This document shows, one piece after another, positions 23,543-26,272 of a stretch of DNA of 64,000 bases (the stretch's first letter is position 1; each line of letters begins with the position of its first letter). The stretch covers positions 186,001 to 250,000 of IMG/VR virus record IMGVR_UViG_3300028840_002431; one strand, written 5' to 3'. A program made the position numbers and the translations under genes. The notes under the pieces are model-generated. The model was not told the origin of the DNA. It did no database searches and was given only the letters and a program-made list of their open reading frames with translations.

Positions 23543-23568
23543 TTTAGGTTGGACAATTCCAGTTGTAG
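23543..23568 (+). promoter_or_regulatory. class A-like motif upstream of the tRNA-mimic array
   Basis: TTTAGG-N16-GTAG; a TTGACA-N16-TATCTT also lies at 23440-23467. Confidence 0.5.
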
Positions 23569-23610
23569 TAAGTGTCTATAAGGGACATAGTTTCCTTGTA
23601 GACGTATCCT

Positions 23611-23685
23611 GCATCGTTACGCCTCAGAGGTTGAGCGACGGGGTTGATGGTCCCGTGGACGCTGGTTCGAACCCAGCACGATGCG
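23611..23685 (+). tRNA. tRNA-Ile(GAT)-like element with aberrant D arm
   Basis: acceptor GCATCGT/ACGATGC, loop TTGATGG, T arm GCTGG-TTCGAAC-CCAGC. Confidence 0.6.
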
Positions 23686-23695
23686 CCGGGAGTTC

Positions 23696-23747
23696 GGCCG
23701 GTTCTCCCTCCGCCCGCTGCAACGCAAGACGGAAGAACAAACCGGCC
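23696..23747 (+). ncRNA. minihelix-like stem-loop (copy 1)
   Basis: GGCCGGTT/AACCGGCC. Confidence 0.5.
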
Positions 23748-23760
23748 TCAGTAATTTCAT

Positions 23761-23839
23761 ACGCGGGTAGCTCAGTTGGTAGAGCGACGGACCTCTCTCG
23801 GGAGATCCGGAGGCGGTGGTTCGATCCCATCCCCGCGTG
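23761..23839 (+). ncRNA. tRNA mimic lacking an anticodon loop
   Basis: canonical acceptor, D and T arms; anticodon arm extended and capped TCTC-TCGG-GAGA. Confidence 0.75.
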
Positions 23840-23843
23840 CCTT

Positions 23844-23925
23844 GCGTGGGTAGCTCAGTCGAGATCCAGAGCGCCGTGGGCCTTCGGGTCTTCGGAGGTC
23901 GGGGGTTCAAGTCCTTCCCCACGCG
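23844..23925 (+). ncRNA. tRNA mimic with UUCG-capped anticodon arm
   Basis: GCGTGGG/CCCACGC; GGCC-TTCG-GGTC in place of anticodon loop; T loop TTCAAGT. Confidence 0.75.
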
Positions 23926-23936
23926 CCGGGAGTTAT

Positions 23937-23986
23937 GGGCCGGTTATCCCGTCACCCTTCGGGGGGACAAATCAACCGGCCCACCA
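23937..23986 (+). ncRNA. minihelix-like stem-loop ending ACCA (copy 2)
   Basis: GGGCCGGTT/AACCGGCCC-ACCA with internal cUUCGg hairpin. Confidence 0.55.
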
Positions 23987-23988
23987 AT

Positions 23989-24090
23989 ACGCGGGTAGCT
24001 CAGTTAGGGTTTCAGCCTTCGGGTTGAGATGCGGTAGAGCGCCAGGGTCCGCCTTGGAGGTCGGTGGTTCGAATCCATCCCCGCGTGCCA
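23989..24090 (+). ncRNA. tRNA mimic with D-loop hairpin insertion and shortened anticodon loop
   Basis: ACGCGGG/CCCGCGT-GCCA; UUCG hairpin in D loop; CCAGGG-TCCG-CCTTGG. Confidence 0.75.
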
Positions 24091-24091
24091 C

Positions 24092-24204
24092 GAACGGTAG
24101 CTCTGGTTGGAGAGTAACAACGGAACTAGAACCACGTGAAGTCCTAGGCAGTAGCGTGGGAAAGGGTCCTGCGTCAGGTGGTTCGAGTCCATCGCCGTTC
24201 ACCA
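24092..24204 (+). ncRNA. tRNA mimic with ~60-nt replacement of anticodon/variable region
   Basis: GAACGGT/GCCGTTC-ACCA; T arm GGTGG-TTCGAGT-CCATC. Confidence 0.65.
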
Positions 24205-24206
24205 AT

Positions 24207-24331
24207 GTGTGGGCCGCTCAGCTAATCGGAGTGATCGTCCGACAGGCTTGTCAGGACAGGCTTAAGAGCGGAGCAACGGGAATGACTCCGGATAAACCCG
24301 TTGCATGGTGGTTCGAGTCCATCCCCATGCA
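24207..24331 (+). ncRNA. tRNA mimic with expanded D and anticodon arms
   Basis: GTGTGGG/CCCATGC; CCGCTC/GAGCGG; GCAACGGG/CCCGTTGC with 16-nt loop; intact T arm. Confidence 0.65.
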
Positions 24332-24336
24332 CCGAA

Positions 24337-24414
24337 GCGCTAGTAGCTCAGTTGGTAGAGCGCCCAGACTGATGTCCTGGGAGGTCGGAGGTTCGAACCC
24401 TCCCTCGCGCACCA
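24337..24414 (+). tRNA. tRNA-Ile(GAT)-like with 9-nt anticodon loop
   Basis: canonical D and T arms, CCCAG-ACTGATGTC-CTGGG, ACCA end. Confidence 0.7.
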
Positions 24415-24518
24415 TGTGGGCGTCCAAAGCACTTAGAGTTTGCCGACTCAAAAAGGCTGTGGACGGTGCGAGGCTGATTCGCGGTAGGTCTCAAGTTGGG
24501 GTGGCTCCCTCCCGCATG
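24414..24518 (+). ncRNA. highly degenerate tRNA mimic
   Basis: ATGTGGG/CCCGCAT; CGTCCA/TGGACG; loop CTGATTCGCGGTA shared with next element; T arm degenerate. Confidence 0.5.
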
Positions 24519-24524
24519 ACTAAT

Positions 24525-24612
24525 CGCCGGGTAGCTCAATTGGTCAGAGCGACTGTCCCTGATTCGCGGTACGGGCGGGAGTATCCAGGTTCAAGTCCTG
24601 TCCCGGCGACCA
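24525..24612 (+). tRNA. tRNA-Ile(GAT)-derived element with 14-nt anticodon loop
   Basis: CGCCGGG/CCCGGCG-ACCA; canonical D arm and T loop; loop CTGATTCGCGGTAC. Confidence 0.7.
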
Positions 24613-24673
24613 GACAATCTAACAATGGTGTTAGATTGCTGTCAGAAACGGCGACCCCGGTCGTCTAACCTAC

Positions 24674-25108
24674 ATGAACGAGGAAACAACATGTCTAACA
24701 ACCAGTCCCATTGAGCCTCAGAAGCTCTATATCATCGCCCGTGCCGACCTTGCTCCGGGTCTACAGGCCGCCCAAGCCTGTCACGCCCTCCGTCTTTTCG
24801 CGGAAGAGCACCCGGAAGAGGAACAGAAGTGGTACGAGGAATCCAACAACATCGTCCTTCTCCAGGTTCCGAACGAGAAGGAACTTCTCGCCCTCAAGGA
24901 GAAGGCCAACGGCTACCCGGTGTCCCTCTTCCGGGAGCCGGACGTGAACGACGAGGCCACGGCCATCGCTCTCGGCCCGGAAGCGAGGCCGCTCACAAGT
25001 AACTTGCCTCTCCTTCTCAAGGATGCTAACCCCCGGTGTAATATACGGGAACGGAAACCCAGATCACAAGGAATCAGAAAATGGCTAAAAGGCTTAATCA
25101 ACTCCTAG
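24674..25108 (+). CDS. Pth2-like peptidyl-tRNA hydrolase
   Basis: KLYIIARADL.PGLQAAQACHA...IVLL...FREPD...TAIALGP...LPLL matches the PTH2 fold pattern; start uncertain. Confidence 0.8.
   Translation: MNEETTCLTTSPIEPQKLYIIARADLAPGLQAAQACHALRLFAEEHPEEEQKWYEESNNIVLLQVPNEKELLALKEKANGYPVSLFREPDVNDEATAIALGPEARPLTSNLPLLLKDANPRCNIRERKPRSQGIRKWLKGLINS
25034..25043 (+). promoter_or_regulatory. class B promoter-like motif for the 25081 gene and downstream RNAs
   Basis: CGGTGTAATA. Confidence 0.6.
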
Positions 25109-25815
25109 CAATCGAGAAAGGCGTCAAGCAACAGACGACCAAGGAACTGACGGAACTCCACCGGGTCTCTCAGATTCCGGAACTGTACGACGGCCATGCC
25201 AAGACGTACGAGCCTCTGGATGACGAGGGCGATCGGTTCCCTCCCGAAAGCAAAATCCTGCAACAAAAGGCTGCGGACATCCTCGCTCAGGTGGGGAAGC
25301 TCGAAGCCAAGATGATCGACATCGTGGCCGAAAAGGACATCACGAACTGTAAGGCCAAGGCCGCAATCCGCTTGGACGGGTTGGAGATAGCCCCTATACC
25401 GGCTGTCTACCTCCTGTGGTTGGAGAAGCGATTGGAGGATCTTCACACCTTCATCTCCAAGCTTCCGACCCTGGACTCGTCCGTGGCATGGCACTCGGAC
25501 CAGTCCCAGGATTGTATGGCCACCGAAGCGCTGGTCACGCACAAGAGTAAGAAGGTGATGCGTAACCACGTGAAGGCCAAGGCTACGAAGGAACACCCGG
25601 AACAGGTCGATGTCTACCACGAGGACAAAGTGGTTGGTAACTGGACCAACATCCGGTACTCAGGTCGTCTTACCGTCGAGCGCAAGAGTCTGTTGATCGA
25701 ACGTGTCCGGTCTCTCCAAGAGGCCGTGAAGCAAGCTCGTGAAGAGGCCAACATGACGGAGGTAGAGACGATCACAAGCATTGGCGAACCCATGATGAAG
25801 TGGTTGTTCGCCTAA
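25081..25815 (+). CDS. hypothetical coiled-coil protein (resembles DUF7873 from memory, unverified)
   Basis: RLNQLLAIEKGVK...YEPLDDEG..FPPE...LLWLEK.L.DLHTFI.KLPTLD...ATKEHPEQV...AVKQAREEAN; SD AAGGA. Confidence 0.75.
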   Translation: MAKRLNQLLAIEKGVKQQTTKELTELHRVSQIPELYDGHAKTYEPLDDEGDRFPPESKILQQKAADILAQVGKLEAKMIDIVAEKDITNCKAKAAIRLDGLEIAPIPAVYLLWLEKRLEDLHTFISKLPTLDSSVAWHSDQSQDCMATEALVTHKSKKVMRNHVKAKATKEHPEQVDVYHEDKVVGNWTNIRYSGRLTVERKSLLIERVRSLQEAVKQAREEANMTEVETITSIGEPMMKWLFA

Positions 25816-25850
25816 GGTTTGCGCCCGCTTCGGCGGCGCTAAGATCTCCA

Positions 25851-26028
25851 AGGGAGCAAGCTGAAAGCTAAGACTGAAGTTGAATAGGCAATTTTCCGTG
25901 TTGGGAAACCAACGTCCTGGTTCAAGTCCAGGGGGACGGACCGCTCGAAAGAGCTTCACAGACCGTCCCTGGCGAAATTGGCAGACGCGACGGATGGCCA
26001 ACCGTAAAAGCTCAAGCTGGTAATCCCT
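25851..26028 (+). ncRNA. Y-RNA-like RNA 1: circularly permuted class II tRNA-like domain on a long irregular stem
   Basis: order is TCCGT (25895), variable arm GTTGG-GAAA-CCAAC, T arm CCTGG-TTCAAGT-CCAGG, GGGACGG, linker, CCGTCCC, D arm GCGAAATTGGCAGACGC, ACGGA (25994); closed by AGGGA/TCCCT. Confidence 0.8.
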
Positions 26029-26036
26029 AAGCTGAA

Positions 26037-26223
26037 GGAGGTAGTTAACTTCGCGCTCTCAACTTTCCCGAAACACTTTCGTCAAGATGTGGGTTCGATT
26101 CCCTCCCCGGCCTCCACGGTAAGACCGTCTCAAAACTTGGCTGGGTAGCTCAACGGCAGAGCGTGGCGGCATCAGAGATAAAGACGGGAATTAAACGCTG
26201 TGCGCGAACTGACAGTGACTTCC
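26037..26223 (+). ncRNA. Y-RNA-like RNA 2: circularly permuted class I tRNA-like domain on a long irregular stem
   Basis: CGTCA (26080), T arm GTGGG-TTCGATT-CCCTC, CCCGGCC-TCCA, linker, GGCTGGG, TA-GCTC-AACGGCA-GAGC, TGGCG (26168); closed by TTCCCG/CGGGAA, TTCGCGC/GCGCGAA, GGAGGT/ACTTCC. Confidence 0.8.
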
Positions 26224-26236
26224 ACGTTTACCATAT

Positions 26237-26272
26237 GGACCGGCTCCCACGGGTAGGGGGTCGGTCCTTTTT
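26237..26272 (+). terminator. intrinsic terminator
   Basis: GGACCGGCTCCC/GGGGGTCGGTCC stem plus T run at a convergent junction. Confidence 0.8.

What the first reader, a model, noticed from the sequence alone, without database searches (positions are those of the whole stretch)
23543..26272. Candidate phage tRNA-mimicry system: tRNA-mimic array, Pth2-like hydrolase, coiled-coil protein and twin permuted tRNA-like RNAs
Seen: one co-oriented 2.7-kb unit with a promoter-like motif at the start and a terminator at the end. It holds nine tRNA-shaped elements plus two minihelices (nearly all unlikely to decode normally), a Pth2-fold gene, a 244-aa gene, and two circularly permuted tRNA-like RNAs. 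Established: phages carry normal tRNAs, Pth2 hydrolyses peptidyl-tRNA, and hosts use anticodon nucleases and tRNA-directed toxins. Inference: the unit produces tRNA-shaped RNA for non-decoding use, such as decoys for tRNA-targeting defences, sponges for synthetases, EF-Tu or RelA, or an RNP scaffold. Pth2 could recycle peptidyl-RNA. I do not recognise this combination as a described system.
Basis: partly seen in the sequence, partly recalled or inferred. Interest (0 to 1): 0.92.

Follow-up and report, generated by a model that had tools for sequence, protein, structure and literature searches.

The report
Conserved protein plus twin tRNA-like RNA
In a 416-kb phage, a string of anticodon-less tRNA look-alikes and a Pth2-like gene precede a protein of unknown function (DUF7873) and a ~350-nt RNA with two rearranged tRNA-like domains; the protein and RNA occur together in hundreds of bacteria and phages and seem undescribed.

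Summary
Window 23611-24612 carries eight tRNA-shaped elements and one looser cloverleaf. Only one has an ordinary 7-nt anticodon loop. Next come a PTH2-family ORF, a DUF7873 ORF, two circularly permuted tRNA-like domains and a terminator.

The four-part "system" is not conserved. In 167 other DUF7873 loci, only the gene and the downstream RNA recur together. A covariance model of the second RNA domain hits 83 of 88 phage-dominated loci and 75 of 80 bacterial loci. Covariation is strong, and both domains have 7-bp acceptor hairpins. No PTH2-like gene lies within about 3-4 kb of any of the 87 other loci tested. The closest relative, a complete 411-kb phage, gave no match to the PTH2-like protein or to the array DNA.

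The RNA has the layout of YrlA, the Ro60-bound bacterial Y RNA. It scores far below Rfam's threshold, is tandem, and is not linked to Ro60. Both the PTH2-like gene and the DUF7873-RNA pair are often found inside phage tRNA clusters.

Best reading: this is a phage tRNA island carrying a new Ro60-independent, Y-RNA-like protein-RNA module. The non-decoding tRNA mimics are specific to this lineage. Function is unknown. Processing by RNase P and CCA addition, and protein-RNA binding, are inferred, not shown.

The parts
23440..23467 (+). Sigma-70-like promoter candidate (TTGACA, 16-nt spacer, TATCTT) upstream of the array
   Evidence: Consensus scan, (10 of 12 matches). A consensus match only; function not shown.
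23611..23687 (+). E1: tRNA-like element and the only one with a 7-nt anticodon loop (GAU). The D-arm is atypical and the tail is GCC.
   Evidence: ARAGORN. Rfam tRNA 23.4 bits, below the gathering score of 29. Fold. Stem counts.
23688..23760 (+). Spacer hairpin 1 (GGGAGUU..GGCCGGUU..AACCGGCC), a paralogue of spacer 2
   Evidence: Sequence. Fold of -22.6 kcal/mol.
23761..23841 (+). E2: tRNA-like element whose anticodon loop is replaced by an extended stem capped with UCGG
   Evidence: Rfam tRNA 52.8 bits with a 13-nt insert in the loop..
23844..23927 (+). E3: tRNA-like element whose anticodon loop is replaced by a cUUCGg-capped stem. The D-loop is enlarged.
   Evidence: Rfam tRNA 41.0 bits..
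23928..23988 (+). Spacer hairpin 2 (GGGAGUU..GGGCCGGUU..AACCGGCCC)
   Evidence: Sequence. Fold of -28.2 kcal/mol.
23989..24089 (+). E4: tRNA-like element with the same acceptor and T-arm as E2. It has a 32-nt UUCG-capped hairpin in the D-loop, and its anticodon stem is capped by UCCG.
   Evidence: Rfam tRNA 41.6 bits..
24092..24204 (+). E5: acceptor, D-arm and T-arm are kept and the tail is ACCA. A structured insertion of about 60 nt replaces the anticodon arm.
   Evidence: Not called by ARAGORN or Rfam.
24207..24334 (+). E6: acceptor and T-arm are kept. The D-arm is expanded into a branched insert. The anticodon arm is an 8-bp stem with a 16-nt loop.
   Evidence: The acceptor pairing GUGUGGG/CCCAUGC was read by eye.
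24337..24414 (+). E7: near-canonical tRNA shape with a 9-nt anticodon loop, one acceptor mismatch and an encoded ACCA tail
   Evidence: ARAGORN. Rfam tRNA 53.8 bits..
24415..24524 (+). E8: four-way-junction RNA without a T-loop motif; only loosely tRNA-shaped
   Evidence: Fold. No T-arm was seen by eye or in the fold.
24525..24612 (+). E9: tRNA-like element with an irregular, enlarged anticodon region and an encoded ACCA tail
   Evidence: ARAGORN. Rfam tRNA 39.6 bits with a 20-nt insert..
24674..25108 (+). PTH2-family ORF of 144 aa, a divergent relative of archaeal and eukaryotic peptidyl-tRNA hydrolase 2
   Evidence: Pfam PF01981, 1.5e-9. phrog_1866, 1.5e-20. Far below the NCBIfam Pth2 equivalog cut-offs. 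In the alignment to 1wn2 and 2zv3, KGK is replaced by PGL.
25081..25815 (+). DUF7873 ORF of 244 aa, the protein partner of the downstream RNA
   Evidence: Pfam PF25283, 7.5e-82. AlphaFold2 model with mean pLDDT 94. No informative structural match.
25862..26047 (+). RNA domain 1. A period-6 CUNA repeat region comes first. Then the permuted tRNA-like module: T-arm 25916-25932, a 7-bp acceptor hairpin and a D-arm. A conserved hairpin region follows.
   Evidence: Model R2, 35.3 bits over the full length. Family covariation.
26050..26209 (+). RNA domain 2. An outer helix, an internal loop (CUCAAC in the window, where the family has AUCGAC, opposite UUAAACG) and an inner helix enclose the second permuted tRNA-like module. 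Its acceptor loop begins UCCA.
   Evidence: Model R1, 87.3 bits, E 1.8e-20. Weak Rfam YrlA hit of 28.9 bits. Family covariation.
26237..26275 (+). Intrinsic-terminator-like hairpin (12-bp stem, 9 G-C pairs) followed by TTTTTAATT

Best explanation
The locus is a co-oriented tRNA island of a megaphage, and its conserved core is a two-part module.

Part one is the DUF7873 protein. Part two is a structured RNA of about 350 nt made of two circularly permuted tRNA-like domains. Each domain runs: anticodon-like stem, variable loop, T-arm, 7-bp acceptor hairpin, D-arm. The RNA also carries conserved flanking motifs: period-6 CUNA repeats, and an AUCGAC/UUAAACG internal loop.

Shown:
- The gene and the RNA travel together in phages and in bacterial chromosomes of at least seven phyla, and no other gene partner is conserved.
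- The RNA is a gene of its own. It is unlinked from the protein gene in Herpetosiphon, and it lies on the opposite strand in two loci.
- It is transcribed in a cultured bacterium (coded as organism A; a Myxococcus xanthus locus was the query).

Inferred:
- DUF7873 binds this RNA, forming a ribonucleoprotein analogous to Ro60-YrlA but independent of Ro60.
- RNase P cuts each acceptor loop 5' of G+1. After trimming or CCA addition the RNA is a nicked three-piece molecule with two tRNA-like elbows and CCA ends, as was shown for Mycobacterium smegmatis YrlA.
- These tRNA-like surfaces dock the particle onto machinery that recognises tRNA, such as translation, tRNA repair or turnover enzymes.

The PTH2-like gene and the eight or nine anticodon-less tRNA mimics upstream are additions specific to this lineage, and both kinds of element are typical of phage tRNA islands. 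The mimics keep the parts read by RNase P, RNase Z, the CCA-adding enzyme and T-loop enzymes. They have lost the decoding part. They most likely serve as stable processed tRNA mimics and as processing punctuation for the operon, not as decoders.
For: Linkage of gene and RNA.
- Model R1 gives full-length hits of at least 50 bits just downstream of DUF7873 in 83 of 88 loci (my count from that table).
- R1 also hits 75 of 80 bacterial loci.
- R2 hits lie directly upstream of the R1 hits.
- In four complete bacterial genomes the single top R1 hit is the one beside DUF7873.

RNA structure.
- Domain 2: 85.9% of cells paired against 60.8% in shuffles, and 34 of 36 pairs covary.
- Domain 1: 92.2% paired against 69.7%.
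- T-arms and acceptor stems are 99-100% paired.

Independence and self-sufficiency.
- No other gene family recurs next to DUF7873 across the bacterial loci.
- In Herpetosiphon the RNA is at 1.17 Mb and the gene at 3.0 Mb.
- In L059 and L112 the RNA is on the opposite strand.

No dependence on Ro60.
- No TROVE gene is found in this phage or in four other DUF7873 phages.
- 12 of 30 DUF7873-bearing bacterial genomes have no TROVE match, including two chromosome-level assemblies, and none of the matches is adjacent.

Expression. Presumed-sense read depth is 82-144 over domain 1, against 20-65 over the coding sequence, in raw RNA-seq reads of organism A.

Processing precedent. M. smegmatis YrlA has a 7-bp acceptor stem, is cut by RNase P and receives CCA in vivo (PMC4201824). 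By my reading of alignments A4 and A6, the base before G+1 is usually U or A, and roughly half to 60% of acceptor loops begin NCCA.

tRNA-island context.
- 42 of 87 DUF7873 loci have tRNA genes within about 3-4 kb, nearly all co-oriented with the gene.
- PTH2-like relatives in phage Myrna and in Bixzunavirus phages sit inside tRNA arrays.

Array integrity. 55 of 56 acceptor pairs and 39 of 40 T-stem pairs form, with six different acceptor sequences, and all eight elements keep NCC(A) tails.
Against: No direct evidence exists that DUF7873 binds the RNA. Its fold matches nothing informative.

No processing sites were detected in the one RNA-seq data set laid, which reported no read-end pile-ups. 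That library is ordinary fragmented RNA-seq, and its strandedness is assumed.

Many acceptor loops lack CCA.

The window's own domain 1 scores only 35 bits, and its AUCGAC motif is degenerate (CUCAAC).

Expression of the phage locus is untested; only DNA runs hold it.

The array has no homologues, so its conservation rests on comparing its own paralogues. Co-transcription of the parts from one promoter to one terminator means a functional tie between the array, PTH2 and the module in this phage cannot be excluded.

A few loci lack a detectable RNA: L013, L014, L109, L117 and L118.
Confidence: 0.6

Rival explanations
1. All four parts form one integrated tRNA-mimicry counter-defence system. The array supplies decoys or sponges for host factors that target tRNA, Pth2 recycles peptidyl- or acyl-RNA, and DUF7873 with the twin RNAs forms the scaffold.
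For: All parts lie on one strand between one promoter-like site and one terminator, with no internal terminator. The mimics keep perfect acceptor and T stems and NCC(A) tails, while stable tetraloops replace the anticodon loops. That pattern looks selected rather than decayed. PTH2-like genes and the DUF7873-RNA pair both favour phage tRNA islands. From my own knowledge, decoys without anticodons could still soak up toxins that act on the acceptor end.
Against: tblastn found no PTH2-like gene within about 3-4 kb of 87 other DUF7873 loci. The nearest complete relative phage gave no match to the PTH2-like protein or to the array DNA. Bacterial chromosomal copies stand alone. No homologous array turned up. 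Anticodon nucleases need the loop that is absent here. The PTH2-like protein lacks the conserved Lys of the KGK motif.
Confidence: 0.15
2. The downstream RNA is an ordinary Ro60-binding Y RNA of the YrlA/YrlB type that works with the host's Rsr. DUF7873 is an unrelated or accessory neighbour.
For: The only Rfam family that responds is YrlA, at 28.9-37 bits. The module order is the same: T-arm, acceptor-like hairpin, D-arm. The family motif (G/A)UCGA(C/A) on the 5' strand of the enclosing helix resembles YrlA's GNCGAAN0-1G motif (PMC4201824; alignment). 18 of 30 DUF7873 genomes have some TROVE match.
Against: Scores are far below the gathering score of 69, and the YrlA model also responds to tandem tRNAs. 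TROVE is never adjacent and is absent from 12 of 30 genomes and from five phages. Most of the TROVE matches cover only about 60-80 residues. In G016 and G019, separate weaker tRNA-like hits lie next to the TROVE gene, so the two systems coexist as distinct loci. The near-universal partner is DUF7873.
Confidence: 0.1
3. Nothing functional beyond ordinary genes. The array is a decaying duplicate tRNA cluster, made redundant by the 44 canonical tRNAs elsewhere in the genome. The downstream structure is a cis-acting 3'UTR, stabiliser or terminator element of the DUF7873 mRNA.
For: The genome holds a near-full canonical tRNA set and a tmRNA at 64-94 kb. The array has no detectable homologues. In most loci the RNA directly follows the gene on the same strand.
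Against: Stems are almost perfect despite different sequences, and three UNCG-type tetraloops (two UUCG, one UCCG) plus a UCGG loop were gained. The RNA covaries over about 60 pairs across phyla. It is unlinked from the gene in Herpetosiphon and inverted in L059 and L112. Its read depth is higher than that of the coding sequence.
Confidence: 0.1
4. The twin elements are permuted or split tRNA genes that are processed into decoding tRNAs.
For: The 3' half precedes the 5' half, as in the permuted tRNA genes of Cyanidioschyzon (my own knowledge). Many acceptor loops begin NCCA.
Against: No anticodon loop can be formed. The anticodon-like stems of 5-7 bp continue into long conserved helices and repeat regions, not into a bulge-helix-bulge junction.
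Confidence: 0.03

Closest known systems
YrlA/YrlB bacterial Y RNAs bound by Rsr (Ro60) (Rfam RF02553; Chen et al. 2014, PMC4201824)
   Same: Both have a tRNA-like domain in permuted order: T-arm, acceptor-like hairpin, D-arm, closed by a helix formed from the flanks. Both are paired with a dedicated neighbouring protein gene, occur in bacteria and phages, and often come as two RNAs in tandem. The mycobacterial YrlA has a 7-bp acceptor stem that RNase P cuts and that receives CCA. A similar short motif sits on the 5' strand of the enclosing helix.
   Different: The partner gene is DUF7873, not a TROVE/Ro60 protein, and there is no linkage to rsr or rtcB. Both domains here are full tRNA-like modules within one conserved unit of about 350 nt. 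The unit has extra conserved features: period-6 CUNA repeats and a UUAAACG loop. It scores 29-37 bits against a gathering score of 69.
Phage tRNA islands with embedded non-tRNA genes and stable RNAs (for example the mycobacteriophage cluster C tRNA arrays; T4 tRNA-region stable RNAs, from my own knowledge)
   Same: Co-oriented arrays of tRNA genes are interspersed with small ORFs. PTH2-like genes lie inside such arrays in Myrna and in Bixzunavirus phages. The DUF7873-RNA pair lies inside them in NiceHouse, Phendrix and Racecar.
   Different: In this locus almost every tRNA has lost a normal anticodon loop, while the genome keeps a complete canonical set elsewhere.
Non-decoding tRNA mimics used as processing or stability modules (mascRNA/MALAT1, gammaherpesvirus TMERs, tmRNA's tRNA-like domain) (my own knowledge)
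   Same: The acceptor and T-arm elbow is retained, the anticodon arm is shortened or replaced, and the elements are recognised by RNase P, RNase Z and the CCA-adding enzyme. In E1 and E3 a tRNA-like unit is followed by a hairpin, which resembles the TMER layout.
   Different: Those examples are eukaryotic or viral Pol III and nuclear systems, or, in tmRNA's case, are aminoacylated. None is an array of eight or nine units in a phage.
Archaeal/eukaryotic Pth2 (PF01981), known in jumbo phages (Iyer et al. 2021, PMC7824862)
   Same: The fold family is the same and the protein matches above Pfam's threshold. The presence of PTH2 in large phages has already been described.
   Different: The sequence is divergent. 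It falls far below the equivalog cut-offs and has PGL where Pth2 has KGK. It fits best a phage-only family of unknown function, phrog_1866.

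Membership tests
YrlA Y RNA (Rfam RF02553) | Score at or above the family's gathering score of 69 bits | tested here: not met
   Window 28.9 bits, L005 37.1, L006 32.9. The model also responds to tandem tRNAs.
YrlA Y RNA (Rfam RF02553) | tRNA-like domain in the order T-arm, acceptor-like stem-loop, D-arm, enclosed by a helix formed from the flanking sequence | tested here: met
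   Both domains have this order, and covariation supports it.
YrlA Y RNA (Rfam RF02553) | Encoded next to an Rsr/Ro60 (TROVE) gene | tested here: not met
   No TROVE gene in this phage or in four other DUF7873 phages. It is never adjacent in 30 bacterial genomes and is absent from 12 of them.
YrlA Y RNA (Rfam RF02553) | Ro60-binding module with the motif GNCGAAN0-1G, and binding to Rsr | tested here: inconclusive
   A similar motif, (G/A)UCGA(C/A), is conserved in domain 2 of the family, but the window has CUCAAC. Binding cannot be tested with these tools.
tRNA (Rfam RF00005), for the array elements | Cloverleaf scoring at or above 29 bits | tested here: met
   Met for E2, E3, E4, E7 and E9 (39.6-53.8 bits). 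E1 scores 23.4 bits. E5, E6 and E8 are not detected.
tRNA (Rfam RF00005), for the array elements | A 5-bp anticodon stem with a 7-nt loop presenting an anticodon | tested here: not met
   Only E1 has a 7-nt loop, and its stem is 6 bp. E2-E4 are capped by tetraloops, E5 and E6 carry large inserts, E7 has a 9-nt loop and E9 is irregular.
Peptidyl-tRNA hydrolase Pth2 (PF01981; NCBIfam NF003314, TIGR00283) | Family-level sequence match | tested here: met
   Pfam 38.5 bits against a cut-off of 23. Matches to solved Pth2 structures at 2e-5 to 8e-5.
Peptidyl-tRNA hydrolase Pth2 (PF01981; NCBIfam NF003314, TIGR00283) | Equivalog-level score and conserved catalytic residues (the Lys of KGK and the Asp of the D-A-G motif, recalled from the Sulfolobus Pth2 work) | tested here: not met
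   33.8 bits against a cut-off of 126, and 30.8 against 82. The alignment places PGL opposite KGK and Glu opposite Asp. The identity of the catalytic residues comes from memory.
DUF7873 (PF25283) | Full-length match above the gathering score | tested here: met
   275 bits, covering positions 2-242 of 244.
Permuted or split tRNA genes | After processing, the two halves restore a complete tRNA with an anticodon loop | tested here: not met
   No anticodon loop is present. The stems continue into conserved helices and repeats.

The most novel reading that the evidence does not exclude
DUF7873 and its tandem permuted tRNA-like RNA form a previously undescribed, widespread ribonucleoprotein. It would be a second Y-RNA-like system, independent of Ro60, present in more than 500 bacterial species and more than 200 phage contigs. 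After RNase P and CCA processing, the RNA would present two tRNA-like acceptor ends. In this megaphage the module has been combined with an array of anticodon-less tRNA mimics and a divergent PTH2, giving a dedicated operon that interferes with host processes that recognise tRNA.
Probability: 0.4. Interest if true: 0.85.

Novelty: new variant of a known kind. Interest (0 to 1): 0.72.

Why it matters
Bacterial RNAs that mimic tRNA and come with a dedicated protein partner are rare. Ro60-YrlA is the main example, and its function is still debated.

This work points to a second, larger family that should be easy to study. A structured RNA of about 350 nt with two tRNA-like domains is coupled to one small protein. 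The pair occurs in genetically tractable hosts (Streptomyces, Myxococcus, Nocardia, cyanobacteria) and in cultured phages (Gordonia, Rhodococcus, Arthrobacter, Pseudanabaena, Ralstonia phiRSL1, Vibrio and Klebsiella phages).

It gives DUF7873 a testable context. It explains the unannotated gaps of 450-1100 nt seen in each phage and bacterial locus examined. It supplies two covariance-model seeds for annotation.

The megaphage array of tRNA mimics capped with tetraloops in place of anticodon loops is also unusual. It is a candidate case of a virus using non-decoding tRNA shapes.

Tried and rejected
- Single-sequence scan of IMG/VR for DUF7873 relatives found nothing. The alignment-based scan worked.
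- Fold searches of the DUF7873 model in PDB by Foldseek, PDB by VIA-align wide, AFDB clusters and the ESM Atlas gave little. They returned one protein of unknown function (3kdq, Z 9.2), DUF6847-like phage proteins and generic helical matches. A PDB profile search found nothing.
- PADLOC and NCBIfam have no model for DUF7873.
- Searching IMG/VR for the array's spacer motif returned two chance matches, inside what reads as coding sequence with no tRNA or R1 match.
- A search for a conserved protein neighbour of DUF7873 in 82 bacterial loci found only lineage-local synteny.
- Looking for RNA-seq of the phage found only DNA runs.
- Laying reads on the Myxococcus locus showed transcription but no callable ends.
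- I could not establish pairing between the 5' CUNA repeats and the middle region. RNAalifold predicts none, and the two regions are similar in sense, not complementary.
- Literature searches for DUF7873, PF25283, and permuted or twin tRNA-like RNAs in phages found no description. [quoted passage not shown]

Full report
**Setting.** The window is positions 186001-250000 of a 416.5-kb IMG/VR virus record, estimated 87% complete. ARAGORN on the whole genome finds 44 ordinary tRNAs and a tmRNA clustered at 64-94 kb on the other strand. It also finds five more tRNAs at window 38.8-43.6 kb and five odd ones in the region under study. The aberrant array is therefore separate from a near-complete canonical set.

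**The observation.** Reading and folding the sequence, together with ARAGORN and Rfam, gives the following picture.
- Eight elements have a canonical T-arm and a 7-bp acceptor stem: E1-E7 and E9.
- Across them, 55 of 56 acceptor pairs and 39 of 40 T-stem pairs form, using six different acceptor sequences. All eight have NCC(A) tails.
- Only E1 has a 7-nt anticodon loop.
- In E2, E3 and E4 the loop is replaced by an extended stem capped with UCGG, cUUCGg and UCCG.
- E4 also carries a UUCG hairpin in its D-loop.
- E5 and E6 have large structured insertions, E7 has a 9-nt loop and E9 is irregular.
- E8 is a four-way junction without a T-loop.
- Two related spacer hairpins follow E1 and E3.
- The ORFs match PTH2 (1.5e-9) and DUF7873 (7.5e-82).
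- A strong terminator-like hairpin ends the unit at 26237-26275.

The description is confirmed.

**The key result.** tblastn with the DUF7873 protein finds 75 cultured-phage records. In each of the four loci I opened, the gene is followed by a gap of 400-1160 nt with no annotated gene, apart from one 70-aa hypothetical ORF in Racecar. The four are Rhodococcus phage NiceHouse, Gordonia phage Phendrix, Arthrobacter phage Racecar and Pseudanabaena phage Pam2. The same gap appears in a related 411-kb phage and in two bacterial chromosomes. Each gap holds two modules in the order T-arm, 7-bp hairpin, D-arm.

I collected 80 IMG/VR loci and 80 bacterial genome loci with an alignment-based scan. These come from Streptomyces, Nocardia, Dactylosporangium, Myxococcus, Herpetosiphon, Chloroflexota, cyanobacteria, Deinococcales, Armatimonadota and Acidobacteriota.

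**RNA models.**
- Model R1 covers the second domain (142 positions, 36 pairs). Its seed alignment shows 85.9% of cells paired against 60.8% in shuffles and 40-48% with slid partners. 34 of 36 pairs change on both sides.
- R1 finds a full-length match of at least 50 bits in 83 of 88 loci, the window among them at 87.3 bits (my count). Of the remaining five, one is truncated (L039).
- R1 finds a full-length match in 75 of 80 bacterial loci, typically about 190 nt after the stop codon.
- Model R2 covers the first domain. Its seed is 92.2% paired against 69.7% in shuffles.
- R2 matches lie directly upstream of the R1 matches. In the window the R2 match is 25862-26047 at 35.3 bits.

**Specificity.** In four complete bacterial genomes of 7-13 Mb, the single best R1 hit is the one beside DUF7873. 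In the phage's own genome the next-best hit, at 44.8 bits, is a tandem tRNA pair.

**The RNA is its own gene.**
- In Herpetosiphon aurantiacus the only DUF7873 gene is at 3.0 Mb and the RNA is at 1.17 Mb.
- In L059 and L112 the RNA lies on the opposite strand. In L059 it is in line with two tRNA genes.
- Raw RNA-seq reads of the organism behind L120, coded by the tool as organism A, give presumed-sense depth of 82-144 over domain 1. Depth is 20-65 over the coding sequence and 24-50 over domain 2. No read-end pile-ups were called.

**What it resembles.** The only Rfam family that responds is YrlA, at 29-37 bits against a gathering score of 69. YrlA is the Ro60/Rsr-bound bacterial Y RNA, and its tRNA-like domain has the same permuted order. 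In M. smegmatis it has a 7-bp acceptor stem, is cut by RNase P and receives CCA in vivo, and is followed by a second RNA, YrlB (PMC4201824).

The RNAs here share that anatomy. By my reading of the alignments, the base before G+1 is usually U or A, and roughly half to 60% of acceptor loops begin NCCA.

They are not linked to Ro60:
- No TROVE gene is in this phage or in four other DUF7873 phages.
- 12 of 30 DUF7873-bearing bacterial genomes gave no TROVE match, and no match was adjacent.
- In two genomes, weaker tRNA-like R1 hits lie about 1 kb from the TROVE gene. These are probably the true YrlA, so the two systems coexist as separate loci.

No other protein family recurs beside DUF7873. DUF7873 is therefore the candidate partner, but this rests on inference from linkage alone. 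The AlphaFold2 model is confident (mean pLDDT 94), yet it matches only proteins of unknown function.

**The other two parts.** tblastn found no PTH2-like gene in the stretches held for 87 other DUF7873 loci, about 3-4 kb on each side. The closest relative phage, complete at 411 kb, gave no match to the PTH2-like protein or to the array DNA. Bacterial copies stand alone.

Even so, 42 of 87 DUF7873 loci lie among tRNA genes, nearly all co-oriented with the gene. Relatives of the PTH2-like protein sit inside tRNA arrays in Myrna and in Bixzunavirus phages. PTH2 in jumbo phages is already known (PMC7824862). Both genes are thus habitual passengers of phage tRNA islands, which explains why they meet here without being one system.

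The PTH2-like protein is divergent. It falls far below the equivalog cut-offs. The alignments place PGL opposite the KGK motif.

**The array.** I found no homologue, so conservation can be judged only among its own paralogues. Pairing is almost perfect with differing sequences, NCC(A) tails are retained and stable tetraloops were gained. These features argue against simple decay. Because the anticodon loops are missing, a decoy role against anticodon nucleases is unlikely. Mimicry of the acceptor and elbow surfaces, or a role as processing punctuation, is more plausible. All of this is inference.

**Novelty.** The held literature has no mention of DUF7873 or PF25283 and no description of such an RNA. 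The recently reported bacterial tRNA mimics are other families. Rfam 15 has no matching family.

I rate the pair as a new variant of a known kind: a Y-RNA-like tRNA mimic with a new partner and a tandem architecture.

Noticed in passing
window 25862-25915; alignment A6 columns 28-55 (related loci): The 5' part of the RNA carries four or five period-6 repeats of the form (A/G)N-CU-N-A, for example AAGCUGAAGCUGAAACUCAAACUGA. A similar run follows domain 1. The positions are conserved across phyla, no pairing partner was found, and they could be sites for an oligomeric protein.
   Followed up: partly
L120:3903 and L120:5181: Reads and contigs from other strains match the Myxococcus locus only between 3903 and 5181. 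That stretch runs from 98 nt upstream of the DUF7873 start to about 90 nt past RNA domain 2. Beyond it the sequence is unrelated, so the 1.28-kb gene-plus-RNA unit behaves like a discrete cassette.
   Followed up: no
G015 (Herpetosiphon aurantiacus DSM 785) C1:1172195-1172476 and C1:3008209-3008934: The RNA and the DUF7873 gene are 1.8 Mb apart in this genome, and both are intact. The related Herpetosiphon loci L117 and L118 also lack an adjacent RNA.
   Followed up: partly
G016:C1:1888174-1888242 and G019:C1:6335305-6335378: Weak R1 hits covering only the tRNA-like core lie about 1 kb from TROVE-domain genes. They are probably genuine YrlA RNAs. These genomes therefore carry both an Rsr-YrlA locus and a DUF7873-RNA locus.
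   Followed up: no
window 26271-27803 and 27805-29259 (- strand): Two adjacent paralogous ORFs of 510 and 484 aa share an HELQHxGQD (HExxH-like) motif. They have no Pfam family and only a weak match to phrog_34216. They converge on the terminator of the unit.
   Followed up: no
window 20909-21337 (- strand): A phage-encoded RRM-domain protein (PF00076, 2.5e-25) with a Gly/Arg-rich tail lies 2 kb upstream of the array.
   Followed up: no
window 38796-43594: A second small cluster holds five tRNA genes that ARAGORN calls normally: Pro-CGG, Pro-UGG, two Met-CAU and Arg-CCU. Rfam scores four of them at 41-64 bits but gave no match above threshold for the Met gene at 39095. They are interspersed with ORFs. 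The main set of 44 tRNAs and a tmRNA is at genome positions 64-94 kb.
   Followed up: no
window 23807-23876 (E2/E3 junction): E2, E3 and E4 have nearly identical acceptor stems. As a result, the 3' acceptor strand of one element can pair with the 5' strand of the next. This gives an alternative permuted fold that both RNA models score weakly (27.9 bits).
   Followed up: no
L095:5762-5913 and 6327-6470: One Ktedonobacterales locus has two full-length domain-2 matches (85 and 90 bits), 1.0 and 1.6 kb downstream of the gene. The RNA appears to be duplicated or displaced there.
   Followed up: no
DUF7873 residues 153-182 (window about 25537-25626): This is the most conserved stretch of the protein, T-x-R-T-K-K-x-P-R-N-H-V-K-A-E-A-T-x-x-H-P-A-Q-V-E-V-Y-x-E-D. 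It lies on a long beta-hairpin and is rich in Lys, Arg and His. It could be an RNA-binding or catalytic surface.
   Followed up: no
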